Shown here: positions 15,201 through 64,000 of the stretch, piece by piece | Numbering within the stretch: the first letter of the stretch is position 1 | Layout: every line of letters begins with the position of its first letter | Assembly (NCBI RefSeq): GCF_044704955.1 | Contig: NC_091999.1 | Location: forward strand, 27,714,001 to 27,778,000 | Direction: 5' to 3' | DNA length: 64,000 nucleotides | From: Pristiophorus japonicus | Lineage: Eukaryota | Made by a program: the position numbers and the translations under genes | The notes under the pieces: model-generated | The model's input: only the letters and a program-made list of their open reading frames with translations | What the model was told of the DNA's origin: nothing | Databases searched by the model: none

Positions 15201-16167
15201 GATGTACAATTGTTGTAGTTCATCCATGCAGTCTCTAAATGTCTGCCATTGCCCATCCACTGTCAACTCCTTAAGTATCATTCGCCAATCTATCCTAGCC
15301 AATTCACGCCTCATACCTTCAAAGTTACCCTTCGTTAAGTTCTGGACCATGGTCTCTGAATTAACTGTTTCATTCTCCATCCTAACGTCGAATTCCACCA
15401 TATTATGGTCTTCCCCAAGGGGCCTCACATTACACATTCCTCGCTCATTACACAACACCCAGTCTAAGATGGCCTCCCCCCTAGTTGGTTCCTCGACATA
15501 TTGGTCCAGAAAACCATCCCTTATGCACTCCAGGAAATCCTCCTCCACCGTATTGTTTCCAGTTTAGTTAGCCCAATCTATATGCATATTAAAGTCACCC
15601 ATGATAACTGCTGCACCTTAATTGCATGCACCCCTAATTTCCTGTTTGATGCCCTCCCCAACATCACTACTACTGTTTGGAGGTCTGTACACAACTCCCA
15701 CTAACGTTTTTTGCCATTTGGTGTTCTGCAGCTCTACCCATATAGATTCCACATCATCCAAGCTAATGTCCTTCCTAACTATTGCATTAATCGCCTCTTT
15801 AACCAGCAATGCTACCCCACCTCCTTTTCCTTTTATTCTATCCTTCCTGAATGTTGAATACCCGTGGATGTTGAGTTCCCAGCCCTGATCATCCTGGAGC
15901 CACGTCTCTGTAATCCCAATCACACCATATCTGTTAACATCTATTTGCACAGTTAATTCATCCACCTTTTTACGGATACTCCTTGCATTAAGACACAGAG
16001 CCTTCAGCTTTGTCTTTTTAACACACATTGTCCCTTTATAATTTTGCTGTAATGTGGCCCTTGGGATTCTCTGCCCTCCACTTTTACTATTCTCCTTTCT
16101 CTCTTTTGCCTCTGTCTCCCTTTTATTTCCCTCTGCCTCCCTACATAGGTTCCCATCCCCCTGCCAT
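12293..16167 (-). mobile_element. Long CR1 LINE (element A), endonuclease plus RT ORF2, decayed
   Basis: LNARSIRKK..GITETW, VVYRPP, PQGSVLGP, FADDTK; 3' UTR and tail at 12293-12369. Confidence 0.92.
12367..13203 (-). mobile_element. 5'-truncated CR1 (element B) nested in the 3' UTR of element A
   Basis: Own TTCTTATG-type tail and RPHLEYCVQFWSP region; host UTR resumes at CATGGCTGA 13204. Confidence 0.85.
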
Positions 16168-16548
16168 CTGAATTTGAAATTGAATCATGCTACTGATTCC
16201 AAGGGGATCTTTTACTTGGAGATTGTTTATTAATCCTGTCTCATTACACAGGACCAGATCTAAGATAGCTTGCCCCTTGGTTGGTTCCGTTATATACTGT
16301 TCAAGGAACCCATCCCTTATGCACTCGATGAACTCTTCCTCAAGGCTACCTGACCAATTTGATTTGTCCAATCAATATGGAGATTAAAATTACCCATGAT
16401 TACTGCTGTTCCCTTTTTACTAGCCCCACTATTTCCTGGTTTATACTCTGACCAACAGAGTTGCTGCTGTTCGGCGGCCTATAGAATACACCCACCAAGT
16501 GACTTTTTCCCTTTATTATTCCTTATCTCCACCCAAACTGTTTCAGCA
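16165..16548 (-). mobile_element. CR1 ORF2 fragment (element C, 5' piece)
   Basis: TVWVEIRNNKGK; EEEFIECIRDGFLEQYITEPT..AILDLVLCN. Confidence 0.8.
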
Positions 16549-19345: not shown

Positions 19346-20374
19346 GGGATTAGAAGGGGAAGATTTGCAGATGGGAAACTGGAACCAAACATCACCAAGA
19401 TCTCACAGAGTCACTTGATCCACCGCAACATGAATATCATTGGCCTTTGAATGTGGAAGGAGAAATGTTTGTCTCTTCTGCCTGCAGGCAAATATTCCAA
19501 ACATCAGTGTGACTGCAAAAGCACTGAGACACACACAGCCGAGTGAGAGTGTTCCATGGCACTGCCTTTGGAAAGAGCTTTAACCAGTTACACAGCCTGA
19601 AAAAACATCGCACCATTCACAGCGCAGATAATTTGTAAACGTATTGTGTGTGGGCGAGGCTTCAACTGATCATCCAATCTGGAGAGATACCAGCAGCATG
19701 GAGAAACCGTGGGAATGTGGAGACTGTGGGAAGGGATTCAGTTACCCGTTCTGAGCTGGAAATTCACAAGCGCATTCACACTGGGGAGAGGCTGTTCACC
19801 TGTTCAGAGTGTGGGAAAGGATTCACTCGGCCATCCCACCAGCTGAGACACCAGCGAATACATACCGGGGAGAGGCAGTTCATCTGCTCCATGTGTGGGA
19901 AGGGATTCAGTGATTCATCCAGCCTACTGGCACACCAGCCAGTTCACACTGGGGAGTGGCCATTCACCTGTGTCCGTGTGTGGGAAGGGATTCACTTGTT
20001 CATCCAACCTACTGGCACACCAACTTGTTCACACCAATAAGAAACCGTTTAAATTTTCTGACTGTGAGAAGAGCTTTTAAAGCAGAAATGATCTGAGGAA
20101 ACACCAATGCACTCACACTGGGGAGAGGCCGTTCACTTGCTCCGTCTGTGGGAAGCGATTTACTGCTCCATACAACCTGCTGACACACCAGCGAGTTCAC
20201 ACTGGGGAGAGGCCGTTCACTTGCTCAGAGTGTGGGAAGCGATTCACTCAGAAATCCAACCTGCTGACACACCAGCGGGTTCGCACTGGGGAGAGGCCAT
20301 TCACCTGTTCCATCTGTTGGAAGGGATTCACTGCCCCATACAACCTGCTGAGACACCTGCGAGTTCACAAGTGA
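19346..20374 (+). pseudogene. C2H2 zinc-finger pseudogene, frameshifted
   Basis: Same acceptor and leader as the 1854 exon; MEKPWEC start; fingers split across frames; ends RVHK-stop like copy 1. Confidence 0.85.
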
Positions 20375-25528: not shown

Positions 25529-27812
25529 GGCGACGACTATGCAAATCCAATGGAAAGATGCAGCAAACTGTGGGCGTCCTGGAGAAGGTCTTGGAGGATG
25601 GGGACTAGGAAGCCTATGTCGAACGGCTAAACCAGTACTTTGTAGCCAATGAGCTGGATGGAGAAGGAGGTGCTGCGAAAAGGAGAGCAGTCCTCCTCAC
25701 GGTTTGCGGGGCACCGACCTACAGCCTCATGAAGAATCTTCTGGCTTCAGTGATACTCACAGATAAGTCGTATGAGGAGCTGTGTGCACTGGTTCGGGAG
25801 CATCTTAACCCGAGGGAGAGCGTGCTGATGGCGTGGTATCGGTTCTACATGTGCCAGCGATCTGAAGGTCAGGAAGTGGCGAGCTACATCGCCGAGCTAA
25901 GGCGACTTGCAGGACAATGTGAATATGATGGCTACCTGGAGCAGCTGCTCGGAGACTTTTTTGTACTGGGCATTGGCCACGAGACCATCTGACGAAAACT
26001 TTTGACTGAAGAGACACCGACCCTCAGTAAGTCCATTGAAATAGCATAGGCGTTTATGTCCGTCAGTGATAACACCAAACAAATCTCTCAGCACACAAGT
26101 GCTTGCAATGTTCACAAATTAATTGGAACTGCGTTTGTGAGCAGAAATGTACAGGGCAGAAACCACGAGTTTGCAACAGCCAGAATGCCTCAGGTGACCA
26201 GATGACTCAGAGTCCGCAACAAAGGATGAATGCAAGGTAATTCACACCTTGTTGGCGTTGTGCAGGCTTCCATTCAGCCTATTCATGCCGCTCCAAAGGG
26301 TATGTTTGCAACAGCTGTGGAAAAATGGGGCTCCTCCAACGAGCTTGCAACCTGCTGACCACCACGTGGCAGAGGAAGATCGGTCCATGGTGGATAAAAG
26401 CAATTTCGAGCCTCAGAGAGGAGGCAGATGCTGAAGTAGACGGGCTGTACACATTTTCGACAAAATGTCCACCTATAATGCTAAATGTTAAATTGAATGG
26501 CTTACCCGTAGCCATGGAACTGGACACTAGCGCTTGCCAATCCATCATGGGTAAAAAGATGTTTGAGAGACTGTGGTGCAACAAGACTCTCATACCAGCC
26601 CTGAGCCCCATGCACACGAAACTGAGAACGTACACCAAAGAGCTCATCACTGTCCTGCGCAGCGCCATGGTCAAGGTCACCTACGAGGGCACGGTGCATG
26701 AGCTGCCACTCTGGATTGTCCCGGGCGATGGCCACACACTGCTTGGAAGGAGTTGGCTGGGCAAAATCCGCTGGAACTGGGTTGACATCCGAGCGCTATC
26801 ACATGTCAATGAGGCCTCATGTACCCAGGTTCTTAAAAATATCCTTCCCTTTTTGAGCCAGGCATTAGACATTTTTACCGGGGCGAAGGTGCTCATCCAC
26901 TTGGTCCCAGAGGTACGGCCCATTCACCACAAGGTGCGAGCGGTACCTCACATGATGAGGGAGAGAGTGGAAATCGAGTTGGACAGGTTGCAACGCGAGG
27001 ACATCATCTCCCCAGTGGAATTCAGTAAGTGGGCCAGCCCGATTGTTCCTAAGTGATGGCACAGTCAGGATTTGCGGCGATTATAAAGTAACTATTAATT
27101 ATTTCTCGCTACAGGACCAATACCCACTACCTAAGGCAGACTACCTATTTGCGATGCTGGCAGGAGGCAAGACGTTCACCAAGCTCGACTAAACTTCGGC
27201 CTACATGACGCAGGAGCTGGAGGAGACTTCGAAGGGCCTCACCTGCATCAACACGCACAAGGGACTGTTCATCTCCAACAGATGCCCGTTTGGATTTCGG
27301 TTGGCTGCAGCGATCTTCCAGAGAAACATGGAGAGCCTACTCAAGTCGGTACCATGCACAGTGGTCTTTCAGGACGACATATTGGTCATGGGTCGGGACA
27401 CTGTGGAGCACCTACAAACCTAGAGGGGGTCCTCCAGCGAATGGATCGCGTAGGGCTGCGGCTGAAGAGGTCGAAATACGTTTTCATGGCAATAGAAGTG
27501 GAGTTTTTGGGGAGAAAGATTGCGGCGGACGGCATTCGGCCCACATACGCCAAGACAGAGGCTATCAGGAACGCGCCCAGGCCACAGAACATCATGGAGC
27601 TGCGGTCGTTCCTGGGACTTCTCAACTATTTTGGCAAATTTCTACCGGGGTTAAGCACCCTCTTAGAGCCCTTACATGTGTTATTGCGTAAAGGTGAGAA
27701 CTGGGTATGGGGGAAAAAAACAAGTAATTGCTTTTGAGAAAGCTAGAAACATTTTATGCTCCAACAAGCTGCTTGTATTGTATAACCTGTGTAAAAGACT
27801 TGTGCGAGCATG
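25529..27812 (+). mobile_element. Ty3/Gypsy (Mag-like) gag-pro-RT, decayed, truncated at the start of RNase H
   Basis: Gag YVERLNQYFVAN, two degenerate zinc knuckles, protease ELDTSA, RT WASPIVP, VFQDDIL, ELRSFLGLLNY. Confidence 0.9.
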
Positions 27813-28339
27813 TGTTTTGGATCGATAATAATAGATCCAGATTCGGGATCTGGATGAATGTTAAATAAGAGACAAGACAAATAAAGTAAAGATAAAACAC
27901 CATTTACTGAGAGAAAGGAAACATCATACAGTTTACGAAGAAAAGGGAAGTATGATAAGATGCAACAAAGCTCACAGCCTTCGACCCGTCGGGAACTCCG
28001 CAACGACGGCTGGTCTGGAGCCTTAGGGGTCCTGGCACCACTCGCGAATCACGGTCTAAGGTGAAATTCAAAGAGCTACTGGACAGTTCCGTTCCTTTAT
28101 ACTGTTGAATAAACATAGGTGCATGTGGCGTATGGACAACTCCTAATCTGTAAGGCCCCAGATGTTCTTCCACAAAGCATGAGGCCTCGAGGCGCTGATC
28201 GTCCCACAAACAAAATGGTGTGCGCATCAAGGTCTCTCTCTCTCTGGATCAACAACATTCCACGAGGCATGAAGCAGATACACACTGTAAGTGTCGGAAT
28301 ATCATAATTAACCCTATGTGATTAACCCTATACAATACA
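27813..28339 (-). mobile_element. ERV 3' LTR (527 bp)
   Basis: TG..CA ends; about 92% identical to 33653-34187 by eye (19 mismatches in the first ~250 nt). Confidence 0.92.
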
Positions 28340-28397
28340 ATCCAATCTTGATATTTAGACATTCTAAGTAATATAATCGAGTTGAAAGCGTAATGCA

Positions 28398-28863
28398 TCA
28401 GTTACATATTGTGTATGTGCGAACAACGCCCACAATCTCCATCAAAGAATACATAAATATCAGTAATAACGCGATGAGTAAAACAACGATAGGATGTAGT
28501 AACAGCTTCAAAGCGGCAGATTTCTTTGGGAACCATTCGTAAAAGATGTCCCACCAATGGTTTACAGTAAGGTCATTGACCGTTGTCGCAACTCTGACCA
28601 AGGCGCCTTCACTGTAACTCATAGCAACTTGCAGAGTATGAAGAGTACGCCCTCGTTTGCTCAATTCGTCAGTGACCTTTTGATTATCTTTTAGAAATTG
28701 AGCTTAACGAGTTAGGTCTACAGTGTGGAGGAAGGTTAGTAATTGTCTTGCATACGATCACTGTTAGCTATCCGCCACCCCATGCTGTGTTTGAGGATGG
28801 AAGTAGCACAGTCACAGATAACGAGACACAGAGGCTGGCCAGCACGAGTTGGTAAGTCGCCAT
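28398..28863 (-). pseudogene. env: ERV env, internally deleted (signal peptide plus TM end only)
   Basis: Acceptor CCCACAG at 28878; MATYQLVLASLCVSLSVTVLL signal-like peptide; NHWWDIFYEW..LLLHPIVVLLIALLLIF TM. Confidence 0.65.
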
Positions 28864-28905
28864 TTTGGGCTGAATTCCTGTGGGAGGAATCATAATTATA
28901 TTAAT

Positions 28906-31900
28906 TCAGCCCCGTTTAGTCAATTTACCCTTGTCAACAGAGGGAGGAACATCTTGACCGGTCAGGAGCACCCAATAAGTATTTTGTTCTCCTTTCACTA
29001 ACTTTCCCCCTGCTTGTAAGCGTTTCTGGGGGTACTGCACCCACACTTTTCCTCCTTCACAAACTGTGTCCTGAGTCTGATTTTCTTTTTCAATAGTAGG
29101 GACACTAACTTTGCCTAACATGTGGCTTATGGGAGTTTCCCCCCCCACAATGGTCGGTGATTCAGATTGCGCACTGCTTGTGGGAAAATCTTTAACCACC
29201 CTTGCAATGTGTTAGTGGGAGTTAATATTTTAATCTGTTGTTTAAGTAATCCATTCATGCGTTCCATTAAACCTGCAGCTTGCGGATAGTAAGGTATGTG
29301 AAACATCCAATAGATCTCGTTATCTACCGTCCACTGTTGCACTGTTTGACCTGTGAAGTGCGACCCATTATCGGACTGCACTTCTGCTGGTTCACCGTAG
29401 TATGTGATTAAATTCTCCAGTCCTTTAATCGTACTTGGTTGATTCGCTTTAGTCACTGGATAAGCGATCAAAAGTATAGAATAGGTATCAACAATAGTGA
29501 GCAAATATTGGAACTGTTGTTGCAATGGTAAAGGTCCTAAATCATCAACTTGCCATGTTTCTGCTGGTTGAGTCCCTCTCTTAATTGTCGTTGTAGGGGG
29601 AAATGCTTCACCTTTTGACAAATTTCACAGGTGTTTATGATCTGATTAGCACCGTCCGTAGTCAAATGTAACCCCCCATTTCGTGCCCACTGTATCGTAC
29701 CCTGAATGCCCAAATGTCCAGATTTGTGGTGGGCCCACTTGCCTATGCCATATTCTTCCTCTTCCGCCTCTTTGACAGCCCGTACCCGGGCTATATTATC
29801 AACTGTGTTATTATATTCAGAGGTCTTTGAAGTGTTTTTCATGTGAGTGTCCACATGATATACAGTTATTTTCATCTTCTGGGCTTTGGAACATATTTGT
29901 TCCCATAGGTACTTTCCCCACAAGTCTTTCCCAGTTATTTGCCAGTTATGTTCATGCCAGTTTCGCATTCAGCCCGCCATGCCATTGGCTACTGCCCATG
30001 AGTAAGTATATATGTGTATTTGTTGCTGTTCCTCTTCTAGCGCAGGGACTACAGCTGCTAGTTCTGCTTGCTGGCTGGAGCCTCCCACGCCCTCATCATG
30101 CACAATTGTCTGGTTTTTTGGATTGAAGGCAGCGGCTCGCCATCACCGAAGGCCATTTCGCCAGACCGCTGAGCCACCTGTGAACCAGGCATGGTTACGT
30201 TCTTCGGGTGTTAACTATTCAAAAGACACATCCAAGGAGATCGGTGACTCTTTGGTTAAACTGACAGACCACTGCGTAAGTTCACTCTCAGCTGTTTGTA
30301 GGTATCCAGCCACATGCTCATGTAGTCGGGTGATTCCTTCTTTCCCTTTACTTGCTCTGTCTGCGATATACCATTTCGAGCGCACTATGGAGCTTTGCTG
30401 CACTCGCCCGACCTTGTGTGTCTCATTTTCTGAGAGAACCCAGGATAATATGGGTAGGTCTTGTCTTAAACTGACTTTGTCGTCCCCTGTCTGTCCTTCT
30501 GTTTCTGTTAGGGCCCAATAACATGCTAATAATTGTTTCTCAAATGGAGTGTAACGAGCAGCAGCATCTGTCAATGTTCTAGACCATAACCCTAACGATA
30601 TACGAGTGCCATGTTGAGCCTGCCACAAACTTCATACTGCAGTATCATTGGTAACGGATACCTGGAGCTCAAAAGGCTGTCCAGGCACTCGTGGGGCTAG
30701 GGGTAAAGCTTGAGCTACGGCTTCTTTGGCTGCATCAAAAGCCACCTGTTGTTCCTTTCCCCACTCGAAGTGGGCCTTTTTTCGAGTTGCGGCATACAAC
30801 GATTTTAATAGCAACGTGAGTTGAGGTATGTGTCTCCTCCAGTAACCCAATAGTCCCACGAACCGTTGTGTCTCAGTTTTATTCGTGGAGGTGGCCATTT
30901 CTTTAATTTTATTCCTCACAGGCTCGGGTATGATGCGCTCACCCCGAGACCATTGGATCCCCAGAAACTGGACAAACTGGCTAGGGCCCTGCACCTTCTT
31001 CGGATTTATCTCCAAGCCCAGATCTCGCATGTGTTGGACTAAAGTAGCTAGGGCTTCTGACACCACAGCCTCGGTGGGACCCCTTATTCGTACATCATCG
31101 ATATAGTGTGCCAGTGAGATATTAGGAGCCAACGTGCACATGTCCAGGTCCAGGGCCACCAATCCATGGCATAGGGTAGGGCTATGTAGGTAACCTTGAG
31201 GTAGGCGTTTAAACGTGTATTGCCTCCCTTCCCAAGTGAGTGCAAACTGGTGCTGTGATTCTTCCGCTATTAGAATGGCGAAACTGGCATTGGCCAGGTC
31301 GGTTACCGCATACCACTCCGCACCTTCTTCAGACAGCCGCTCTGTTATAGTTACTACATTGGGACAGCGGTTGCCAGGAGAGGGGCACATTTGTTCAGTT
31401 GTCGGTAATCCACAGTCATCCTCCAACTTTTGTCGGGTTTCTGCACACGCCAAACAGGGCTTTTGTAGGGGACACCACATGTCTAATGATTCCCGCCTCC
31501 AAGAGACCTTGTATGGTTTCCCCTATTTCTTTGTGTCCCCCAGGTATTTGGTACTGTTTCATAGTCACTATACGCAATGGCCGTGGTATTACCACTGGTT
31601 CCCACTTTGCTTCCTCTGCAATCTCAATGATCGCCCATATCCCGAATGAGAATCGCCCGAACGAGATGTTGTGTGTGGTTCCCTTTAAAAGGTCCATCCC
31701 AATAATATGTTCCTTTACTGCCGATATTAAGACCGTTACGCAGCGCGGAGGCCCATTTCCCAACGCCATTCTGATAGTTGTTCGGACAGCGGGCGTTTCT
31801 GCCCCCCACCCCCGAACCCATTAATCATCATACAGGTCCCTGTGTGTTTCCTAGGGTTTCCAAGGATAATAGTAACTTCTGCCCCTGTGTCTAGTAAAGC

Positions 31901-31930
31901 AACATCTCTTTGTATGTTCGCCCCCACCCC
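28906..31930 (-). pseudogene. pol: ERV pro-pol (protease, RT, RNase H, integrase), class III ERV-S/L-like
   Basis: LLDTGAE; LPQGYLHSPTLCHGLV..HYIDD; YTPFEKQLLACYWAL; H..GH..C..C; WQVD, SDNGSHF, PQAAGLMERMNG; several stops and frameshifts. Confidence 0.92.
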
Positions 31931-31959
31931 GCCAATGTATTGTAATCGGAATGTGTGGC

Positions 31960-33623
31960 CTCAGATCCCCGGGAGCTTGGGTTGATGTGGTTCTAACGGG
32001 GAGTACTCCCGGATCCCGGCCACACCCCAGTCGAGGGGATTACTAGCCTTCCACAGCTCTTCTACGCTGGGATATAGGCTAGTGGGAGATGGTTTCTCCG
32101 CATCCGCAGACTTGACGCTATCCGACTTAGTCTCCCTTACCTCCCTCCTTTTACCCTTCCCTGTTCCCGGGACGCAGTGTTCCTTCCACATAGAATACAT
32201 TGCTCCTGTTGGGATTGCATCAATTTTTTTCCTTGGGGACCCCTGCTTTCTATAAAGCCGCGTACATATCCCTCTGCGCAATTCTTTTTTTTTGTCTTTC
32301 CTGACCCTATATCTTTCCTGAGGTCGAACCTTGTCGCTGGTCCCGATCCCCCTCTACATTAGCCGTTCTCGACTCTCGCGCACTATCTTCTACATCGTCT
32401 TACTGTCCTAACAACAGGAGAGCGTCCCCTACCCGCTGCTCTTGGGCTGGTCCCAATAATGCACGTAGCGCACCCCTCATCATAGGAGGGCCACTCTTCA
32501 TCAGCCTGCTCTGCATTCCTGCCGTAAAGAGCTCCTGATCTGGCCCCCCATATTGTTGGTGATATATTCCTCCCTGTGTTTCCATGTTGTGCAATTGTAT
32601 CGCACCCTCCACCACAGTACTCCAAGGTTTTACCTCCCCTTTCCAATCAACGGCAGAGGGATATTTTTGCTGGACCCCTATAGTAACCATGTCCCATAGC
32701 GAACTTGTGCCCTGGACATTTCGTAGCACTGCTGTGATATGGTGGTCCATAATCATAGTCCTCATTTTTATTAACTCTTCAGGGTTAAGTATTACGCCTG
32801 ATGCTCCCTGATCCCAAATCCGGGTTAGCCATTCTGACAATGATTCCTCGCGTTTTTTGCGAAATCGAGACCCTATTTCTTGTAACTCACTAGTGGTGAA
32901 GTCACGCACCCCTCTAGTGGTTACTGGCTGTTCCCCATCTTGCTGTTTCACCTTATTTGTCATAAGGGGTCTAGCTTTCTTGCTCGGAGCGTATGGGGGA
33001 GGGTTTTTAGTTTGCTCCCGTTCCCCCCCTCTCCATCTGACCATTCATATTCTGAGTCAGAGGAGTACCAGATGTCTCCTTCCCAATGAGCCGGATCCCA
33101 AGTGGGTCCAGCTATCAATGCACGTACCTTTGACCGATCTATCTGTAATTTCCGTCGTCTGGATTTTTAATAATTTTGTACTGTCACCAGATGGCATATA
33201 AAAGTTTCTGATTGTTCATTGAGCTTGTCCACCTGTTGTTGTGCAGTGTGGACCGCTTCAGTCAGAGTCGAGTTTTGACTTTCGAAAAACCTTAACAGCT
33301 GTTTTTAACTCTAGGTTTTCTGCCTCACTTTCCTTAAGTTGTTTACACATCGTCTTTAATGCTGTCAACAAAATTCATCCCATTTGTGAGGGATTACTTT
33401 TCTCCTGTGGGAAGCCCGCTTCCTCCAGGAGAGACAGTGCCGCCTGGGCTACGGGTCTATCTTTGCTCTGTTCCAATAACTGCATATCCCAATACTGCGG
33501 GGGTGCAAACTGGGCTAGCACATTGGCAAGAGAGCCAAAACCCTCATCCCTCGTGCTCCACCCTGGTATTCTATACTTCTCTCCCGCAGGAGGAGACTGC
33601 TCCTTGTCTTTTCTCTTAAACAT
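31960..33623 (-). pseudogene. gag: ERV gag, ERV-L/Fv1-like, frameshifted
   Basis: ATG at 33623; PPPY late motif; DFTTSELQEIGSRFRKKREESLSEWLTRIWDQG. Confidence 0.8.
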
Positions 33624-37688: not shown

Positions 37689-37816
37689 CTTCACCAGAGT
37701 GACGGCAGTGCTGTAGGAAATGCTCAGGAAGAACAGGATGATGAATGTGGAAGCGGTTGTCCAGATGTTGCCGCTCTCGTCCTCATAGTCTTCATTCCAG
37801 ATGTGGTCTGAGGAAT
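37689..37816 (-). CDS. IGHM: IgM TM1 exon
   Basis: [43 protein letters not shown] with CART motif; AG/GT boundaries; 128 nt in phase with the Cmu4 internal donor at 40512. Confidence 0.93.
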
Positions 37817-38499
37817 CTACGGGGATGTACGGAGGAAATATATTCAGATCGTTTATTAATCCCGGGTATCATGCTATTATTTTATATTCTCTTTTTTCCC
37901 TTAAGGTATTAGTTTGTTCTTTAATTGGACTTTCAATGTATATTTTGTGTTAAGTTAATCACTCTCAACAATCTCTCACTGTTCCTCACTCCACAGCCGC
38001 TCTTCCTTTACGATCACCCTGTCGTCCGTTTTGGAAAAAATGATAGTTTTGCTTCCATGTCAGAGGCTAATTGATTTTGGATGACATTGCAACGATCTAT
38101 CATTCGGAAATAAGACGATGAAACATCGAGGAAGGTTTACAGCAGGATATCGATTATTTTTCCGCTAGGTTAACGTAATTACTTAGTTGGAGGCTGCCAA
38201 GGAGGCTAGGTAAGAGATCAGTTGTGAGTTATAAACTTGTTTTTTTATTTGTTACGGCAATGCTCTGAACATAAATAACATGTCAGTTTGCAACAACTAC
38301 ATTGATCCAGTGTATATGTAAGACCAGAATAGTGAATTGTGAGATATTATGGTATCAGGAATTATTTATTCAGGCCAAGCGTTGGATACATTGTCCGTCA
38401 TAAAAATGCATCTTAGTTCTACATTCTTCTAAAGCCTGACGTTTTTGTTTGTGCTCTTTAATGTCTATATCACTGTATGACTATCTCTTGTTCTGGATT

Positions 38500-40449: not shown

Positions 40450-40841
40450 TCATTGACAAGAATTGACGGTGTCCATCAGAATAAGGGAAATGTTGACGAA
40501 ACTGGGTTTACCGCTGGATTTATTGACGGTTCTGTTGGTGATCTTCAAGGGGATCGCTTCATGTCCCACCACACAGGAGTAAGAAGCGCCGCTGGCCCAC
40601 TCCTCGGCTGCAATGGATAGCAGGCTGTACATGAAGAAGGATCTGCTGCCGTTCTCCGCCATCACCTCGGTGTTCTTGTAGTTGCCCGAATCCACCGGCT
40701 TGTCATTGACGGTCCATTTGACGAAGATCTCTCGGGGGGAGAAACCTCTCACTAAGCAGGTGAGGCTGACCAACCTCTGAGCGGAGACTTCTTCTGCCGA
40801 GGGCAGGAGGACAGACACGGCTGGTTCCCGTGGATCTTTCG
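40450..40841 (-). CDS. IGHM: IgM Cmu4 plus secretory tailpiece
   Basis: [43 protein letters not shown]-stop; internal donor AGCG|GTAAAC at 40512; AATAAA at 40406-40411. Confidence 0.95.
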
Positions 40842-41740: not shown

Positions 41741-42049
41741 CCTTCTCCTTGTGGATGGATTCTCTGATCGGTGTCGGCATATCCTGATGGCTCACCACGC
41801 AGTAGAATTTATCCCCACTCAGCCAGTCTTGTGTCGAGATTTTTAAGTTGCTGATCACGCTGTTGGGATGCTCTCCCGGTTGGACGGCAATTTCTGATTT
41901 CAAAGCCTCCTTTTCTCGAGTCCAGGTCACAGTGAGCCCATAAGGAGCGTCTGACACGACGCAGGTTAAGGTCACCGTCGCCTCCAGTAATATCTGTTCC
42001 AGTGATGGTGAGCGAAGAGTGATTTTTGAATCGCTGCATGGGACATCCA
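41741..42049 (-). CDS. IGHM: IgM Cmu3 exon
   Basis: 309 nt, [40 protein letters not shown]. Confidence 0.95.
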
Positions 42050-44009: not shown

Positions 44010-44327
44010 CCTGAGATCTGCTGAAGTTATGGTTTTGCGTGACCCCTTGATGAGTGACCTGGCAGGTGTAGACCGAGCCGGTGAACCATTCCTCGGCGGG
44101 GACTGTCAGCCGACTGGCCGTCGAGAAGTTCCCGTTCACCTCAAAGACGGGAGAGGTGACGAAGCCCGAATCCATGAGTTGTCCACTCTTCAGCCAATTC
44201 ACAGTCAGTGACTTTGGCCTGAAATCGATGATTGAACACACGGCGCTTGCATATCTGCTGCTGGTGATTTGTTCAGTGGAACTCAGTGTGAGGAGAACAG
44301 TTGGAGGAACGATGTCCCGTTCAGGAT
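44010..44327 (-). CDS. IGHM: IgM Cmu2 exon
   Basis: 318 nt, [32 protein letters not shown]. Confidence 0.95.
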
Positions 44328-44783: not shown

Positions 44784-45083
44784 CTGGTATTGTGATGGCC
44801 CAGACCGACACACCACGTCGAACCTCGCAGTTGATTGTGCTGCTCCCCACCTCTGACTCGGTGATGGTTAACTGGCTGCTCTGGGTGTAGGTTCCCTTCT
44901 TGTTGAGCACTGGCGGGTAGGTCTTCAATCCAGTGGTGATCGGCACTTTATCTTTCTTCCAGGAAAGGCTGGTGATGTCGGGGGAGTAGTCCATTGCCAA
45001 ACAGCCGTACGTGATGGAGCCATCGGCGCTGGGTTGTTCACAGGAGGAGAGCAGGGCGTAGAGGGTGGGGGGAGACGGTGTTA
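44784..45083 (-). CDS. IGHM: IgM Cmu1 exon
   Basis: 300 nt, [39 protein letters not shown]. Confidence 0.95.
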
Positions 45084-47819: not shown

Positions 47820-48235
47820 ATACTGATTAAGCTATCTCTGCAATGTCCCATCAAGCACTGCCATTTAAGGTAAAGCACGGGTTAGTTGCAGAATAAAGCT
47901 CCCTCTTCACTGTCCCATCAAACACTCCCAAGACAGGTACAGAGTAAAGCTCCCTCTACAGTGTCCCATTAAACATTCTCAGGGCAGGTACAACATGGGT
48001 CAAGATACAGAGTAAAGCTCCATCTACACTGTCCCATCAACACTCCTAGGGCACATAGAGCATGGGCTAAATACAGAGTAACACTCCCTCTACACTGTCC
48101 CATCAAACACTCCCAGGGCACGTACAGCATGGGCTAGATACAGAGTAAAGCTCCTTCTGCCCTGTCCCATCAAACACTCCCAGGGCAGGTACTACCGGGT
48201 TAGAAACTGATTAAAGCTCCTTCTACTGTCTCCCC
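47820..48235 (-). repeat. About 67-bp minisatellite family
   Basis: CAGAGTAAAGCTCCCTCTACACTGTCCCATCAAACACTCCCAGGGCAGGTAC units. Confidence 0.88.
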
Positions 48236-51200: not shown

Positions 51201-51784
51201 GATATTGCTACATTATAATAATGTTAATAATATTAATTTAATGTGTCCCAGCGTGAAATATGTTAATTGTTCAGTACTTAATTACAGTAACAGCTCACGT
51301 ATTGAATCTGAGAGTTCGGGAACATTCGGTCAGTAGATGACAATCCAATTTTCATTAAAAAACTTAAAATTCCTTAAGATTATTTACTGGTCGCTAAGCT
51401 TTCTGTTTTGTGCCTACAATGTTCTTTTAAACACATTTAAACACAATGTTTGCATTCGATCAGAAAAACTGCAGCAATTAATGGTCACCAAAATTAAACA
51501 TTGCAGAAACATCAAACAGTGTAAAAACCATAATGTATTTAGAGTAACCCAGGCACATGTCTCGTCAGCAAATAAACACCAAATCACATCAACAACATTT
51601 TCTGTGGAGAAACAGTTGAATTCTATAATCACTTTGCAGCAGAATCACATTGAACATTGCAAAAAATCTCAAAACAAAATCCACTGAACCTAAGTTTCAG
51701 TGAACGAAATAATTATTAAAATAAACAGAAATATAAAATAAAGACACAAATACAAGAGTTACTGAATGAGTGAATGTTCCTTAC

Positions 51785-51852
51785 CTGCAGTCACCGTCAC
51801 CATGGTCCCTTGTCCCCAGTAGTCCTTGGCAATGTACCCACTCCCGCAGTCC
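51785..51852 (-). CDS. Pre-joined D(D)J segment, DCGSGYIAKDYWGQGTMVTVTA
   Basis: 68 nt from the heptamer to donor G|GTAAGG; WGQG motif; no RSS inside. Confidence 0.9.
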
Positions 51853-51880
51853 CACAGTGACAGGAACCCGCACACATACT
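51853..51880. other. 12-bp-spacer RSS 5' of the D(D)J block
   Basis: CACAGTG - 12 nt - ACACATACT (6 of 9 nonamer consensus positions). Confidence 0.88.
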
Positions 51881-52287
51881 GCACTCACTCTCTGCTCAGT
51901 ACTGACTCTCAACATTCACGTCAAATAGACATTCACTTCCAATACACATTCGCTTCTGATCAAGTTTAGAATTTAGCCAACAGTTTACATAGCACAATTG
52001 AAAGTGAACACAGTTCTAACCAGCTCCCTGCATGTACCAGGCACAGTGAATCGAGCATCACCTCCAGCTCTGCAATTGCTGACACGGTTAACATTAAACA
52101 GGAGCATAATCAAAACCTCCCCTCAGTACATGGGTTAGTGTGTTATATTTTCACCATTGAATTCTCAGTGTGTTAGTTTTGTAAGAAGCGGTTTATGGTC
52201 TTGTTCTGTACATTGCCGGTAACATTGCATTTGACACAATTAATGACCATCAGGTTATGATGTCAGTTGTTGAATTCCCCCTCGATC

Positions 52288-52326
52288 TGTTCTTGTACAG
52301 GTCCAGCCCTGGTTCCTCTCGCTGTG
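52288..52326 (-). other. 23-bp-spacer RSS 3' of VH
   Basis: CACAGCG - 23 nt - ACAAGAACA. Confidence 0.92.
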
Positions 52327-52631
52327 GTACCTTGCACAGTAATAGATGGCGGTGTCTTCGCTCTTCAGATTCTTCATGTCCAGCGCAAAGATGTTGTTTG
52401 AAGTGTCTTTGGATGCAGTAAATCGGCTCGCAATCCCTGCGGCGTAATACTTGTTCGATGGACTGTAATACTGAACCAGCCACTCCAGCCCCTGTCCGGG
52501 ATTCTGGCGGATCCAGTACATGTAGCTGCCACCAAGATCGAAGCCGCTGGTTTTACAGGTCAGTCTCAGGGAGCTTCCGGGAATCCTGATCTCTGCCTCG
52601 GGCTGAGTCAACACCACATCCGACTGGACAC
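52327..52631 (-). CDS. IGHV: IgM VH exon
   Basis: [33 protein letters not shown]; acceptor TTTTTACAG. Confidence 0.96.
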
Positions 52632-52758
52632 CTGTAAAAATAATCAAAATACCCGAAGATTCAATCCTGGTGAAATGATTCCTGACTCTGTAACATTCCA
52701 GAGAGAGACTAACACTGAGACAGTAACAGTGAGAGATTGGACAATAAAAACTACTCAC

Positions 52759-52804
52759 GGGAAAAGAAAGCCAGTAACAGACTGAGAGAAATCGCCGACC
52801 TCAT
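52759..52804 (-). CDS. VH leader exon [15 protein letters not shown]
   Basis: ATG at 52804; donor C|GTGAGT, phase 1, matching the V exon. Confidence 0.93.
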
Positions 52805-52894
52805 CCTCCTGGCAATGTGTGGTGAATGGTTCCGGCAAGAACTCACTGAACAAACCCACTCCCAGACTGTTGTATTGCGGTCCCAGTGACCGGC

Positions 52895-52950
52895 AGTTAA
52901 ATACCCGGGAGATGGGGGCGAGGTTGCAGGCGCCGCCCATTGATTCACTG
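52895..52950 (-). promoter_or_regulatory. VH promoter: TATA-like TATTTAA and decamer-like AGTGAATCA, no octamer
   Basis: About 95-145 nt upstream of the ATG; shark VH promoters are known to lack the octamer. Confidence 0.5.
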
Positions 52951-54161
52951 ATAGAGGCGGTTTCTGGATTCACATCACACCTTCCACATCACCAACAGAA
53001 TGGACTCACATCTGGACTGTAAATTAAATCCCTTTATTTCCTCACTCCTTCACAGAGGATGTGAATCTCTGAGATTGAATTACATTATCAGGGTCTAAAG
53101 ATACTGCCAGTTTCTGTTTCTCCATCTCCCGCTATCTATCCATGCATCTGTACCAATAAAGTATCCCCTATAATCTGAATTGTTATCACCTATGTAACCG
53201 AGTGCGGGAGATGGGTAATGTGATTCTATTTACGGTGTACTTGGCTAAAGCTACACACTTTTGGTCTGGAGATGAGATCATACTCCTCACATTACACAAT
53301 TGTCTCTCATTGCATTTCACTAACTGCCCCTGAGTCTGTGACCCGACGACAGCCGTTTGTAAATTTAGCTGTAAAATAAGTCCGCTTGACTGATGATTCA
53401 GGAGTGAGTTGACGGAGACACATAAGAAAGTGGGTCCGTCCCGCTTCAGACCTGCGTTTTATGAGAGAAACTTGTGAATCAGAACCGATAATGTGATCAG
53501 CAAACCTCGATATCCAAATCCTTGCAGCTAACTTTAATAGCGACCGACTATGTAACAGACACGGGTAACAGGAACACGGTGTATCCTGTACTGAATAAAG
53601 GGACTGAATGGTCCAGAATGGTCTTTATTTGGAAATAGTTTTCATTAGATACCGTGTTGATCAATTCATTATTTTCCGATCCTATTTTTAATGTGGTGAG
53701 CATGGAATTTACGGAAAATCATTCTAGTGATGTTATACCATGTAAAATGTTTCTTATTTTAAAAGTTCGACTGAATAATTGCATGTTCAAATAGTTAAAT
53801 ACCATCTTTCTCCCATTCTTGTTCACGCTATTCTGACCGACACAATATTTGGCAGTAACCCAACCGACTGCCTTCAGCGAGCCTCGAACACCAGTGTCAT
53901 TTACAGGAAGCATTTGGGATTCTTTGCAGTCCATCAAAGGTCTGTTTTCTCACTGCTGACCGCATGCCTGGAAGCCAACTTCAAAACCGTTACATTGTCA
54001 AAAGACCTATTTATATACACATCTACCCAGTAATAGTACTGGAGTTAAATTTAATTTTTTCGTTGTGTAAATGTGTGTAACTGTTCCCATATCCCAGGAA
54101 AGGAAATATATCCAATGCCTCAGACACCATATCAATAGCAGCAGTCAGCTGGAGTATCAGT

Positions 54162-54380
54162 NNNNNNNNNNNNNNNNNNNNNNNNNNNNNNNNNNNNNNN
54201 NNNNNNNNNNNNNNNNNNNNNNNNNNNNNNNNNNNNNNNNNNNNNNNNNNNNNNNNNNNNNNNNNNNNNNNNNNNNNNNNNNNNNNNNNNNNNNNNNNNN
54301 NNNNNNNNNNNNNNNNNNNNNNNNNNNNNNNNNNNNNNNNNNNNNNNNNNNNNNNNNNNNNNNNNNNNNNNNNNNNNNNN
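54162..54380. other. Assembly gap (219 N)
   Basis: Run of N. Confidence 1.
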
Positions 54381-56600: not shown

Positions 56601-56629
56601 GAAAAGGAAAGATGATCTGGTGAAATAAA

Positions 56630-57085
56630 AAGAGAGACAGTGTCGAGGATAATATAAACAGAGACAGTGTCTGGCGTAATATAAACTGAGACAGGATCTA
56701 CTGTAATATAAACAGAGACAGGGCCTAATGTAATATAAACAGGGATAGTGTCCGGAAGAATATAAACAGAGACAGTGTCCAGTGTAATATAAACAGAGGC
56801 AGGGTCTTGTGTAATATAAACAGAGATAGGGTCTGGTTTAATATAAACAAAGACAGGGTCCAGTGTGATATAAACAGAGACAGGGTCTAGTGTAATATAA
56901 ATAGAGACAGGGTCCAGGGTGAAATAGACAGAGACAGGGTCTAGTACAATATAAACAGAGACAGGGTCTAGTCCAATATAAACAGAGGCAGGGCCTAGTG
57001 TAATATAAACAGAGACAGGGCCTGGTGTAATATAAACAGGTACAGGGTCTAGTGTAATATAAACAGAGGCAGGGTCTAGCATAAT
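56630..57085 (-). repeat. 27-bp satellite, reverse orientation
   Basis: TAAACAGAGACAGGGTCTAGTGTAATA units. Confidence 0.92.
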
Positions 57086-57259
57086 ATTAGATAGAAGTAC
57101 AGATAGATGGACAGAAGTCCGAATCGAGGACGGAAGTAACAGACGGACGGACGGATCGACCGAACAACAGACAGACAGACAGATAGACAGTCAGACAGAC
57201 ATGAAGATTTGCATGGCTGGAATGTTGCTTTCAAATTACTCTAGATATTCGATATGTTT

Positions 57260-58140
57260 AAATTACTCTAGACCCTGTATAATTATAACTGCACTGGACC
57301 TTCTCTCTATTCATATTGCACAAGGCCCTTTCTCAATTATTACTGCACTCCTCTCGGGATCTATTTTATTACTGTAAATCCTGTCTCAGTTACACTGCAC
57401 TAGAACCTGTCTCTGTTTATATTATGCTCGGCTCTGTATCAGTTATCACAGTACTCGACCCTCTGTTATAATACATTAGAACCTGTCTCAGTTACTACTG
57501 AACTAGACGCTGTCTCTGTTTATATTACCGTACACCCTGTTTCTGTCAATATTTCCCTAGTCCCTGTCTCTCTTTATATTACACTAGACACTGTCTCAGT
57601 TTATATTGCGCTAGGAAATGTCAATGTTTCTAATACAATAGATCATGTATTAGTTATTATTAGAGCACGATATCCTTTGTTATATTATGTTGGACCCTGT
57701 TTATATTATACTATCCCCTGTGTCTTTATAATAGATTGCTCCTGTCTCTATTTATATTACACTAGACCCTGTCTCTATTTATATTACACTAGATCCTGTC
57801 TCTATTTATGTTACAGTAGACTCTGTCTCTCTTTATATTACACTAGGCCCTGTCTCTATTTATATTACACTAGACCCTGTATTTTCTATATTACACTAGA
57901 CACAGTCTCTGTTTATATTACACTAGACCCTGTATTTTTTATATTACACTCGACACAGTCCCTGTTTATGTAACACTAGACCCTGTATTTTCCATATTAC
58001 ACTAGACACTATCTCTGTTTTTACTACACTAGACCCTGTCTCTGTTTATATGGCACTACACACTGTCTCTTTTTATATTGCACTAGACGCTGTGTCTGTT
58101 TATTTTAAACTAGACCCTGTAAATGTATATATTTAACTAT
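57260..58140 (+). repeat. 27-bp satellite, degenerate
   Basis: TATTACACTAGACCCTGTCTCTGTTTA units. Confidence 0.9.
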
Positions 58141-58409: not shown

Positions 58410-58910
58410 GGAAAGAGATGTCACACTGTGCCATCAAACATTCCCAGGGCAGGTACAGCGCGGGTCTATGCAGAGAAAGGCTCCCTCGATGATGTCCCAT
58501 CAAACACTCCCAGCTCAGGTACAGCACTATTCGAGAAACAGTAAAGCTCCCTCTACACCGTCACATCAAACACTCCCAGGGCAGGTACAGCACGGTTTAG
58601 ATAGAGAGTAAAGCTTGCTCTACACCGTCCCATCAAACTCCCCCAGGGCAGGTACAGCACTGGTCTATGCAGACTAAAGCTCCCTCTACACCGTCACATC
58701 AAACACTCCCAGGGCAGGTACAGCACGGGTTAGCTACAGAGTAAAGCCCCCTCTACACCGTCCCATCAAACTCTCCCATGGCAGGTACATTACTGGTCTA
58801 TGCAGAGCAAAGCTCCCTCGAAACCGACCCATCAAACACTCCCAGGGCAGGTACAGCACGGGGTTAGATGCAGAGTAAAGTTCCCTCTACAGAGTCCCAT
58901 CAAACACCCA
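58410..58910 (-). repeat. About 67-bp minisatellite family
   Basis: Same unit as 47820. Confidence 0.9.
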
Positions 58911-60574: not shown

Positions 60575-61130
60575 AACTAGACCCTTTCTCTGCTGAGATT
60601 ACACTAGACCCTGTCCCTGCTTACATTATACTAGACCCTGTCTCTGTTTATATTACACTGGACCCTGTCCCTGCTTACATTACACTAGACCCTGTCTCTG
60701 TTTATATTACATGAGACCCTGTCCCTGTTTACATTACACTAGACCCTGTCTCTGTTTATATTACACGAGACCCTGTCTCTCTTTATATTACAATCGACGC
60801 TGTCTCTGTTTATATTACACTAGACCTAGTCACTGTTTACATTACATGCGACACTTCTCTGCACTAGACCCTATCTCTCTTTATTTTACACTAGACATTG
60901 TCTCTGTTTATAGTACAACAGGCCCTGTTTCTGTTTATATTACACTAGAATCTGTCTCTGTTTATATTACGCTAGATAATGTCTCCGTTTATATTACACT
61001 AGACCCTATCTCTGTTTATATTACAATAGACCCTGTCTCAGTTTATAATGCACTAGACCCTGTCTCTGCTTATATTACACTAGAGCCTGTCTCTGTTTAT
61101 CTTGCACTTGACCCAGTCTCTATTTAAATC
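60575..61130 (+). repeat. 27-bp satellite
   Basis: Same unit as 57260. Confidence 0.92.
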
Positions 61131-61189
61131 ACTCTAATCGCTGGCTCAGTTATTAATGTATTGCAACTCATCTCTGCTTATATTAGGCC

Positions 61190-62054: not shown

Positions 62055-63663
62055 ATTTATTACACTATACAGTGTCTTTGTTTATATTACACAAGGTCCT
62101 GTCTCTCTTTAAATTATACTAGACCTTGTCCCTGAATTTATTACGTTAGGCCATCTCTGTTTATAATAAACTCGACCCTCTCTCTGTTTATATTACACTA
62201 GACACTGTCTGTGTTTATATTGCAGTAGGCCCTGTCTCTGTTTACATTACACTAGCCGCTGTCTCTGTTTCTACTACACGAGGACATGTCTCTGTTTATA
62301 TTACGCTAGACTCTGTCGCTGTTTATATTACACGAGGCCCTGTCTCTGTTTATATTAAACTAGGCCCTGTCTCTTTTTATATTGCACTAGACCCTGTCTC
62401 TGATTATATTACACTAGACCCTGTCCATGTTTATATTACATTAGACCACGTCTCTGTTTATATTACACTAGACCCTGTCTCTGATTATATTACAGTAGAC
62501 CCTGTCTCTGTTTATATTACACTAGACCCTGTCTCTGTTTATATTACACTAGACCCTGTCTCTGTTTATATTACACTAGACCCTGTCTCTGATTATATTA
62601 CACTAGACCCTGTCTCTGTTTATATTACACTATACCCTGTCTCTGTTTATATTACACTAGACCCTGTCTCTGTTTATATTACATTAGACCCTGTCTCTGA
62701 TTATATTACACTAGACCCTGTCCATGTTTATATTACATTAGACCACGTCTCTGTTTATATTACACTAGACCCTGTCTCTGATTATATTACACTAGACCCT
62801 GTCTCTGTTTATATTACACTAGACCCTGTCTCTGTTTATATTACACTAGACCCTGTCTCTGTTTATATTACACTAGACCCTGTCTCTGATTATATTACAC
62901 TAGACCCTGTCTCTGTTTACATTACACTATACCCTGTCTCTGTTTATATTACACTAGACCCTGTCTCTGTTTATATTACATTAGACCCTGTCTCTGATTA
63001 TATTACACTAGACCCTGTCCATGTTTATATTACACTAGACCCTGTCTCTGTTTATATTTCACTAGACCCTGTCTCTGTTTATATTACACTAGATTATGTC
63101 CCTGTTTATATTACACTAGATTATGTCCCTGTTTATATTACACTAGACCCTGTCTCTGTTTATATTACACTAGACCCTGTCTCTGTTTATATTACACTAG
63201 ATTATGTCCCTGTTTATATTACACTAGACCCTGTCTCTGTTTATATTACACTAGACCCTGTCTCTGTTTATATTACACTAGACCGTGTCTCTGTTTATAT
63301 TACACTAGACCCTGCCTCAGTTTATAATACAATAGTTCCTGTCTCAGTTTATTTTACAGTGGACCCTGTCTCAGTTTATTTTACACTAGACCCTGTCCCT
63401 GTTTATGTTATGTTAGGCCTGTCTCTCTTTATATTACACTACACCTTGTCTATTTTCGTATTACACTAGACCCTGTCTTTGTTTATATTACACTAGACAC
63501 TGTCTCTGTTTAAACTGCACAAGGCCCTGTCCCTGTTTATATTACACGAGTCCCTGCTGCTGTTTACATTACACTAGGCTCTGTCCCTGCTTATATTATA
63601 CTATACCTTGTGTCTCTTTATATTGCACTAGACCCTGCCTATGTTATATTACACTAGACTCTG
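62055..63663 (+). repeat. 27-bp satellite, most homogeneous array
   Basis: About 59 units, near-perfect in 62400-63300. Confidence 0.95.
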
Positions 63664-64000
63664 TGAGGATGCAATACGTTTTTGGTTTGAAATATATGTT
63701 TGTTTTGTTAACAGCTAGCAAGAGCTATCTGAAATTTCTGCTTGATTTGGTATTGTTTCGTTAATATTTGTGTTGAGAAGATGTGGTGAATTTTGTAACA
63801 ATCTCCAAGAGATTGACTGGGAATGAGGGACAGGAGTGAAGGTGAGGAATAGTACACTGCACTTTGTACTACTTAGTGGCAATCTGTGTGTTAAAGGTTA
63901 CTCATTCTCACGTGTGTTGTCCTGTGCCAATTCCTCCGAGTTCTTTAATGTTAAGGATTGTTTTTGCTGCAGTACTTGCTAGTTCGCTGTCACGTGACCC

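What the first reader, a model, noticed from the sequence alone, without database searches (positions are those of the whole stretch)
51785..52326. IgM cluster with D(D)J already fused but V still split: a one-step, light-chain-like heavy-chain locus
Seen: V has an intact 23-RSS. About 400 nt downstream, a single 12-RSS leads directly into 28 nt of D-like and junctional sequence, GGACTGCGGGAGTGGGTACATTGCCAAG. This runs without any heptamer into a J that starts only at GACTACTGG. No other D or J RSS lies between V and the J donor. Known: shark IgM clusters are normally V(23)-(12)D1(22/23)-(12)D2(12)-(22/23)J, and the germline-joined forms best known to me are VD-J and VDJ. Inference: RAG acted in the germline on the D1-D2-J side only. 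The 12/23 rule forbids direct D1-J joining, so CATTGCCAAG should hold a trimmed D2 plus N/P bases. Leader, V, four C exons, secretory and TM exons are all intact, so this would be a functional receptor needing one recombination step and carrying a semi-invariant CDR3.
Basis: partly seen in the sequence, partly recalled or inferred. Interest (0 to 1): 0.85.

Follow-up and report, generated by a model that had tools for sequence, protein, structure and literature searches.

The report
Shark IgM gene with pre-fused D-J
This is an intact shark antibody heavy-chain (IgM) gene cluster whose D and J pieces are already fused in the assembled, most likely inherited, DNA while V is still separate, so one cut-and-join step completes it; it is a little-documented form of the known shark habit of rearranging antibody genes in the germline, and earlier notes of this scan report several more in the same genome.

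Summary
On the minus strand lie a leader, a V exon with a 23-RSS, and about 407 nt further a single 12-RSS. That RSS abuts a 68-nt coding block with no internal signal, followed by a splice donor, four intact Cmu exons with a mu tailpiece, and TM1.

The first 16-17 nt of the block equal a free D1 that, in paralogous DNA contigs of the same species, still has its own 3' heptamer. The last 40 nt are the J core shared with paralogous J segments that keep their RSS. Eleven nt between them are unassigned.

A cDNA-like contig from a second sample and study carries 59 nt of this junction without a mismatch, fused to a V end. So the D-J fusion is most likely inherited, and V-to-DJ joining does occur. 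That one transcript is out of frame.

Earlier notes of this scan, which I did not verify, report V/D/J clusters with a 12-RSS on J in this genome, so one D1-to-J join would suffice. The scan has also noted this V-D(D)J layout on other DNA of this genome at least five times.

Verdict: real, and a new variant of known germline-joined shark Ig clusters. Function is unproven. Interest is moderate.

The parts
52759..52804 (-). Leader exon (ATG at 52804-52802; GT donor at 52758-52757)
   Evidence: Read from the sequence. A cDNA-like contig of run X6 removes 52758-52632 with GT..AG ends (joint 52628/52756, cut +3).
52327..52631 (-). VH exon, open, ending TGT GCA AGG TAC on a codon boundary
   Evidence: Pfam V-set, E 1.5e-15. 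Best named relative is the Heterodontus francisci Ig heavy-chain V region at 75% identity.
52288..52326 (-). V 23-RSS: CACAGCG, 23-nt spacer, ACAAGAACA
   Evidence: It is the only hit of its class in the window on both strands.
51881..52287 (-). V-D intervening DNA (407 nt) with no credible RSS
   Evidence: DNA contigs of paralogs align to 51853-51971 at about 94% identity. This shows the flank is the usual flank 5' of D1 (records 2 and 10).
51853..51880 (-). 12-RSS: nonamer AGTATGTGT, 12-nt spacer, heptamer CACTGTG
   Evidence: It is the only perfect-heptamer 12-RSS hit in the window.
51836..51852 (-). D1 part of the fused block (17 nt)
   Evidence: loose end at 51837. A paralogous DNA contig has the same heptamer and the same 16 nt, then C and its own 3' heptamer CACGGTA. 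A VD-joined paralog has the near-identical D1 ending ...GGGT, then CACGGTG.
51825..51835 (-). 11 unassigned junction nt (ACATTGCCAAG): P/N bases, a D2 remnant and/or the 5' end of J
   Evidence: Compared by eye with the two paralogous J 5' ends seen (4/8 and 5/12 matches). The first AC could be P bases of D1. Not resolved.
51785..51824 (-). J core (D Y W G Q G T M V T V T A), GT donor at 51784-51783
   Evidence: Paralogous J segments diverge into their own heptamers at 51825 and 51822. cDNA contigs run from 51785 into CH1-like sequence (loose ends at 51785).
44784..45083 (-). CH1 exon (phase 1, AG acceptor, GT donor)
   Evidence: Pfam C1-set.
44010..44327 (-). CH2 exon
   Evidence: Pfam C1-set, E 3e-17.
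41741..42049 (-). CH3 exon
   Evidence: Pfam C1-set.
40453..40841 (-). CH4 exon with secretory mu tailpiece and stop; internal G|GTAAA donor for the membrane form at 40512/40511
   Evidence: It aligns end to end (residues 6-129) with Cmu4 plus tailpiece of solved human IgM chains, E about 1e-47.
37689..37817 (-). TM1 exon (acidic stretch plus membrane helix)
   Evidence: AG acceptor and GT donor are in the right phase. TM2 was not located.

Best explanation
This is an IgM minilocus of a shark in which the D-J side was joined by V(D)J-type recombination in the germ line. The earlier notes of this scan call the genome a sawshark. D1 keeps its 5' 12-RSS and is fused, through 11 junction bases, to the J core. 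All signals that once lay between them are gone. V keeps its 23-RSS.

In a lymphocyte, one RAG cut-and-join between the V 23-RSS and the 12-RSS would complete the V exon. Only the V-D junction would then vary. The rest of CDR3 is fixed, and because J sets the frame, the D reading frame is fixed too (D C G S G Y I A K D Y W).

Shown:
- The anatomy and the intact exons.
- Free D1 and free J paralogs with their own RSS in DNA of the same species.
- One V-to-DJ joined transcript on exactly this junction.

Inferred:
- Germ-line origin by RAG.
- The most likely parent was a one-D cluster (V23/12-D-22/12-J), so a single D1-to-J join sufficed.
- The cluster can yield productive chains.
For: 1. Two RSS only, each unique in the window and placed exactly at a coding end. 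There is no heptamer or nonamer inside 51852-51785.
2. Split paralogs appear in DNA contigs of sample S1. One is a free D1 identical over 16 nt with its own 3' heptamer. Two are J segments that leave the shared core at 51825 and 51822 into CACTGTG heptamers. The 5' flank of the 12-RSS is about 94% identical to paralogous D1 flanks.
3. Run X6 comes from another sample and study. It is cDNA, because it lacks the leader intron. Its record 21 holds 51793-51851 with 0 mismatches in 59 nt, spanning D1, the 11 junction nt and J. That stretch is joined through 3 extra bases to a V end identical over the last 61 nt. A junction made somatically would not recur letter for letter.
4. DNA contigs of X1 and X3 show no V-to-DJ joint.
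5. All coding exons are intact and of mu type.
6. Germ-line joining of shark Ig clusters, ascribed to RAG, is established (PMC2193156; reviews).
7. Earlier notes of this scan list further V-D(D)J and one-D/12-RSS-J clusters in this genome. These are leads only and were not checked here.
Against: - All DNA holders found belong to one sample, which may be the assembly's source. I could not show a DNA contig that bridges the junction. Only the longest contig pieces are listed.
- Sample S3 may be the same animal as S1.
- The V part of the X6 contig differs from this V at 20 of 303 positions, starting 61 nt from the V end. Many of those letters also occur in paralogous DNA contigs. So the transcript may come from a duplicate cluster sharing the same D-J, or the contig may be chimeric within conserved FR3.
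- That transcript is out of frame (49 nt from the Cys codon to the Trp codon).
- No octamer was found in the 596 nt upstream of the leader ATG.
- The 12-RSS nonamer is weak.
- The 11 junction nt cannot be assigned, so the parent and the number of events remain inference.
Confidence: 0.75

Rival explanations
1. A canonical V23/12-D1-22/12-D2-12/23-J cluster underwent two germ-line joins (D2-J and D1-D2, in either order). The 11 junction nt then hold a trimmed D2 plus N/P bases.
For: Canonical four-segment clusters are the norm in sharks (PMC2435157). At least one paralogous J seen has no T-rich nonamer end 12 nt from its heptamer, which fits a 23-RSS J and hence canonical clusters in this genome. 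The 11 nt match neither paralogous J 5' end well (4/8 and 5/12).
Against: No D2 sequence of this species could be obtained, so no base is assigned to D2. Eleven nt is also about the length of a J 5' end (8-10 nt in paralogs) plus 2 possible P bases. Earlier scan notes report fixed one-D clusters with a 12-RSS on J in this genome, which makes a single join sufficient.
Confidence: 0.3
2. The cluster is inherited and looks intact, but it is functionally a relic. It rearranges, yet rarely or never yields a selected heavy chain, as was suspected for joined H-chain genes of the horned shark.
For: The only joined transcript seen is out of frame. The fixed frame places an unpaired Cys in CDR3 (and reading). 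No octamer motif lies in the 596 nt upstream of the leader ATG. Expression of germline-joined horned-shark H genes was not detected (PMC2193156).
Against: All exons, splice sites, both RSS and the TM donor are intact. Two of three random joints are expected to be out of frame, so one example says little. Trimming 5 or more nt removes the Cys codon.
Confidence: 0.3
3. Somatic V-DDJ intermediate or misassembly. The assembly captured a lymphocyte's partial rearrangement, or spliced a D1 contig onto a J contig.
For: V-DDJ is a real somatic intermediate in nurse shark lymphocytes and is prominent for Group 5 genes (PMC2435157). The DNA support found comes from one sample only.
Against: Somatic junctions are polyclonal and cannot dominate a consensus assembly. 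The same 59-nt junction occurs without mismatch in cDNA of another sample and study. The 11 junction nt belong to neither D1 nor J paralogs, so a simple chimera of paralogs does not produce them. Similar clusters are noted elsewhere in the genome (unverified).
Confidence: 0.05
4. No join at all. This is an ancestral D-less cluster whose long J has always carried a 12-RSS.
For: The scan notes mention D-less or 12-RSS-J clusters in this genome.
Against: The first 16-17 nt after the heptamer, and the flank 5' of the RSS, are those of a free D1 that has its own 3' RSS in paralogs. So the 12-RSS here is D1's, not J's.
Confidence: 0.03

Closest known systems
Germline-joined IgM clusters of cartilaginous fishes (VD-J, VD-DJ, VDJ; horned shark, skates, ratfish; nurse shark IgM1gj)
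   Same: A cluster-type minilocus in which coding segments are fused in inherited DNA. The RSS between them are cleanly removed and split paralogs persist in the same genome. The joining is ascribed to RAG activity in germ cells.
   Different: In the listed forms V is always one of the joined partners. Here V is free and only the D-J side is joined. I found no paper in the searchable library that lists a germ-line V-D(D)J IgM cluster. Much of the older literature is not in that library.
Somatic V-DDJ (2R) intermediates of nurse shark IgH (Malecek et al. 2008, PMC2435157)
   Same: The same end product: V with its RSS, then a 12-RSS followed by fused D1-D2-J. This shows that RAG can make this configuration and then complete it by a V-to-DDJ join.
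   Different: Those intermediates are polyclonal products in thymocytes and B cells. This one sits in the assembly, and its junction recurs identically in another sample's cDNA.
IgNAR type III clusters with D1-D2 fused in the germ line (from my own knowledge, not checked here)
   Same: A germ-line join that does not involve V. It reduces the number of recombination steps and limits CDR3 diversity.
   Different: A different isotype. There the fusion is D-D and J remains free. Here J is part of the fusion.
Mammalian DJH intermediate and light-chain V-J loci
   Same: It works alike: one 23/12 join of V to a pre-formed (D)J completes the gene, as in the second step of mouse IgH assembly or in a light chain.
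   Different: The mammalian DJ is somatic and differs in each cell. Here it is one inherited sequence, so most of CDR3 is invariant.

Membership tests
Germline-joined Ig cluster of cartilaginous fish | Minilocus with its own V, (D), J and C exons in one transcriptional orientation | tested here: met
   Leader, V, D-J block, CH1-CH4 and TM1 all lie on the minus strand between 52804 and 37689.
Germline-joined Ig cluster of cartilaginous fish | Coding segments fused, with the RSS between them completely excised | tested here: met
   No heptamer or nonamer lies within 51852-51785. Only two RSS exist in the V-to-J region.
Germline-joined Ig cluster of cartilaginous fish | Split paralogs in the same genome carry RSS at the ends that are fused here | tested here: met
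   DNA contigs of sample S1 show a free D1 with a 3' heptamer and two J segments with 5' heptamers. They diverge at 51837, 51825 and 51822.
Germline-joined Ig cluster of cartilaginous fish | Junction shows V(D)J-type processing (trimming, P or N bases) | tested here: inconclusive
   Eleven nt between D1 and the J core are unassigned. AC after an untrimmed D1 could be P bases. No D2 sequence and no closest J sequence were available.
Germline-joined Ig cluster of cartilaginous fish | Joined form present in non-lymphoid DNA and shared between individuals | tested here: inconclusive
   DNA holders come from one sample only. An identical 59-nt junction occurs in cDNA of a second sample and study. 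Tissue and animal identities are coded, so independence is unknown.
IgM (mu) heavy chain | Four C1-set constant exons, a mu secretory tailpiece, an internal CH4 donor and a TM exon | tested here: met
   Pfam C1-set on each exon. CH4 plus tail aligns end to end with solved IgM mu chains. G|GTAAA donor and TM1 are present.
Canonical shark IgM cluster V23/12-D1-22/12-D2-12/23-J | Two free D segments and a J with a 22/23-RSS (six RSS in all) | tested here: not met
   Only the V 23-RSS and one 12-RSS exist. There is one D1-like and one J element in the window.
Functional rearranging Ig gene | In-frame rearranged transcripts from this cluster | tested here: inconclusive
   One V-to-DJ joined contig was found, and it is out of frame. 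Its V part may belong to a duplicate cluster or be chimeric.

The most novel reading that the evidence does not exclude
In this shark lineage, V-D(D)J clusters with an inherited D-J fusion would be an expanded and expressed subfamily that arose through fixed one-D/12-RSS-J intermediates. They would supply an innate-like IgM subset with a near-invariant CDR3 that needs a single recombination step. This would be a natural heavy-chain counterpart of light-chain assembly, and a record in the genome of the stepwise order of germ-line RAG events.
Probability: 0.3. Interest if true: 0.6.

Novelty: new variant of a known kind. Interest (0 to 1): 0.4.

Why it matters
Germ-line joining of shark antibody genes is the main evidence that RAG acts, rarely, in germ cells and reshapes antigen-receptor loci over evolutionary time.

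A cluster joined only on the D-J side adds the missing permutation to the listed forms (VD-J, VD-DJ, VDJ). It shows that germ-line events need not start at V.

If the one-D/12-RSS-J clusters noted elsewhere in this genome are its parents, the genome preserves successive stages of the process.

Functionally, it would be a heavy chain with light-chain-like one-step assembly and a largely hard-wired CDR3. That bears on innate-like repertoires in early life and on how rearrangement order and allelic exclusion work in cluster-type loci.

It does not reveal a new mechanism.

Tried and rejected
- **Fetching other clusters.** I could therefore fetch no canonical clusters of other sharks, and no paralogs for D2 or J assignment.
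- **V-exon protein search.** It found no protein of this species. The best hit was Heterodontus at 75%. The hit sequences gave no usable D or J information.
- **Earlier findings.** The search of earlier findings by sequence was blank. A look-up with many words found nothing.
- The look-up of sequencing runs and read laying allow one call each and both are used. So I could not ask specifically for a DNA contig bridging 51825-51852, nor lay run X7.
- **Literature.** Searches for a germ-line V-DJ or V-DDJ cluster, or for sawshark immunoglobulins, found nothing relevant.
- **Promoter.** An octamer search upstream of the leader found no match of 7/8 or better.
- **No spliced model.** I searched exons one by one by reference.
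- **Rejected readings.** The somatic or misassembly reading and the 'ancestral long J' reading are rejected for the reasons given under the rivals. The weak RSS-like sites at 52172 and 51442, and the lone heptamer at 52048, are taken as chance.

Full report
**What is there**

The finding lies on the minus strand of the window.

- The leader exon runs 52804-52759. After a 127-nt intron comes a V exon (52631-52327), which is a V-set domain. Its best named relative is a horned-shark heavy-chain V at 75% identity. V ends on a codon boundary with TGT GCA AGG TAC.
- V is followed at once by CACAGCG, an exact 23-nt spacer and ACAAGAACA (52326-52288).
- 407 nt further lie AGTATGTGT, a 12-nt spacer and a perfect CACTGTG (51880-51853).
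- The next 68 nt (51852-51785) are open in the J frame. They end in the J core D-Y-W-G-Q-G-T-M-V-T-V-T-A with a GT donor at 51784-51783.

The consensus scan finds no other credible signal between V and the donor. Across the whole window and both strands, each of the two signals is the only hit of its class. There is one J and one D1-like element in the window.

**The rest of the gene**

- CH1 (45083-44784), CH2 (44327-44010) and CH3 (42049-41741) are open phase-1 exons with AG/GT sites.
- CH4 (40841-40453) starts in the same phase behind an AG acceptor and ends at its stop codon.
- All four are C1-set domains.
- CH4 with its tail aligns end to end with Cmu4 plus tailpiece of solved IgM structures, so the isotype is IgM.
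- The internal G|GTAAA donor for the membrane form (40512/40511) and TM1 (37817-37689) are intact.
- TM2 was not located.
- I searched the exons singly by reference and built no spliced full-length model.

**What the fused block is made of**

I laid contigs of public runs on 51400-53000. DNA contigs of sample S1 (runs X1, X3) include paralogs that leave this sequence at telling places.

- One contig shares the 12-RSS heptamer and the next 16 nt (51852-51837). It then continues with C and CACGGTA plus a 22-nt stretch. That is a free D1 with its own 3' signal.
- A VD-joined paralog shows the near-identical D1 ending ...GGGT before CACGGTG.
- Two other contigs share the J core and leave it at 51825 and 51822. 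Each runs through 7 or 12 further J bases of its own and then into a CACTGTG heptamer. These are free J segments whose coding part extends 8-10 nt 5' of the shared core.
- The flank 5' of the 12-RSS is about 94% identical to paralogous D1 flanks (records 2 and 10).

So 51852-51836 is D1, apparently untrimmed, and 51824-51785 is J. The 11 nt ACATTGCCAAG (51835-51825) are junctional. Their first two bases could be P bases of D1. The rest match the two seen J 5' ends only weakly (4/8 and 5/12). No D2 of this species was available, so they stay unassigned.

**Is it inherited?**

The direct DNA evidence is thin.

- All four DNA holders belong to one sample, possibly the assembly's source.
- The listed contig pieces do not include one that demonstrably bridges the junction.

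The stronger evidence is run X6, from another sample and study.

- X6 is cDNA, since its contigs lack the leader intron and run from J into CH1-like sequence.
- Its record 21 contains 51793-51851 without a single mismatch (59 nt across D1, the junction bases and J). This is joined through three extra bases to a V end that is identical to this V over its last 61 nt.
- Somatic junctions are made anew in each cell. An identical 28-nt D-to-J junction in the assembly and in a rearranged transcript is what an inherited D-J block predicts.
- DNA runs X1 and X3 show no V-to-DJ joint.
- A polyclonal somatic intermediate could not dominate a consensus assembly. The junction bases are in neither paralog class, which argues against a chimeric assembly.

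Earlier notes of this scan also list the same V-D(D)J layout at several other places of this genome. I could not check them and count them only as leads.

**Does it work?**

The X6 contig shows that V-to-DJ joining on this junction occurs, but three points limit the claim.

- That product is out of frame. It has 49 nt from the Cys codon to the Trp codon. An in-frame joint needs added minus trimmed bases equal to 2 modulo 3.
- Beyond 61 nt from the V end, the contig differs from this V at 20 of 303 positions. Many of those letters also occur in paralogous genomic contigs. So it may come from a duplicate cluster with the same D-J block, or it may be an assembly chimera within conserved FR3.
- Other doubts: an unpaired Cys in the fixed D frame, a weak 12-RSS nonamer, and no octamer in the 596 nt upstream of the leader ATG.

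One out-of-frame example is uninformative, since two of three joints are expected to be so. Function is plausible but unproven.

**How it arose**

Germ-line joining of shark Ig clusters by RAG-like activity is established (PMC2193156; reviews). V-DDJ is a known somatic product in nurse shark (PMC2435157).

That holds only for a four-segment parent. Earlier scan notes report several clusters in this genome wired V23/12-D-22/12-J.

**Comparison and verdict**

The cluster meets the tested criteria of a germline-joined cartilaginous-fish Ig cluster and fails those of the canonical four-segment cluster.

It differs from the listed joined forms (VD-J, VD-DJ, VDJ) in that V is not a partner. I found no paper listing a germ-line V-D(D)J IgM cluster, but much of the older literature is outside the searchable library. 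It works like a mammalian DJ intermediate or a light chain, except that the DJ is inherited.

This is a new variant of a known kind. It is moderately interesting on its own, and more so as part of what seems to be a family of simplified IgM clusters in this genome.

Noticed in passing
window 52330-52331 (loose ends of DNA contigs): DNA of the same species holds a paralogous cluster with V already joined to D1 (V end, then the D1-like sequence, then heptamer CACGGTG). It also holds a paralogous V with a normal CACAGCG RSS. So VD-joined clusters, split clusters and this V-DJ form coexist.
   Followed up: partly
window 51825 (loose end in cDNA run X6): A cDNA contig runs from the J core into an intact J heptamer and spacer of a paralog. 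That is a transcript of an unrearranged J (a sterile transcript or unspliced RNA).
   Followed up: no
window 56616-58120, 60576-61185, 62058-63664: A 27-bp satellite (up to about 60 copies per array, 70-84% matches) fills much of the 4-11 kb upstream of the V promoter. An earlier scan note describes a large RSS-like satellite near another IgM constant region. I did not test whether this is the same repeat.
   Followed up: partly
window 47889-48226 and 58423-58909: A 66-67-bp tandem repeat occurs both in the J-C intron side and upstream of V.
   Followed up: no
window 54162-54380: An assembly gap or masked stretch of 219 N lies about 1.4 kb upstream of the leader. It was left untouched.
   Followed up: no
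window 2181-2972 (+), 19639-20371 (+), 10636-11037 (-): Open frames with tandem C2H2 zinc-finger repeats (HTGERPF linkers), seen in the ORF listing.
   Followed up: no
window 44-944 (-), 12470-16184 (-), 25609-33044 (both strands): Open frames that look like retroelements by eye: LINE-type endonuclease and reverse transcriptase, and gag/pol-like frames. Not run against any library.
   Followed up: no
window 52048-52042 and 52172-52133: A lone perfect heptamer without a nonamer, and a weak heptamer/24/nonamer match, lie inside the V-D intervening DNA. I take them as chance, but they could serve as cryptic signals.
   Followed up: partly
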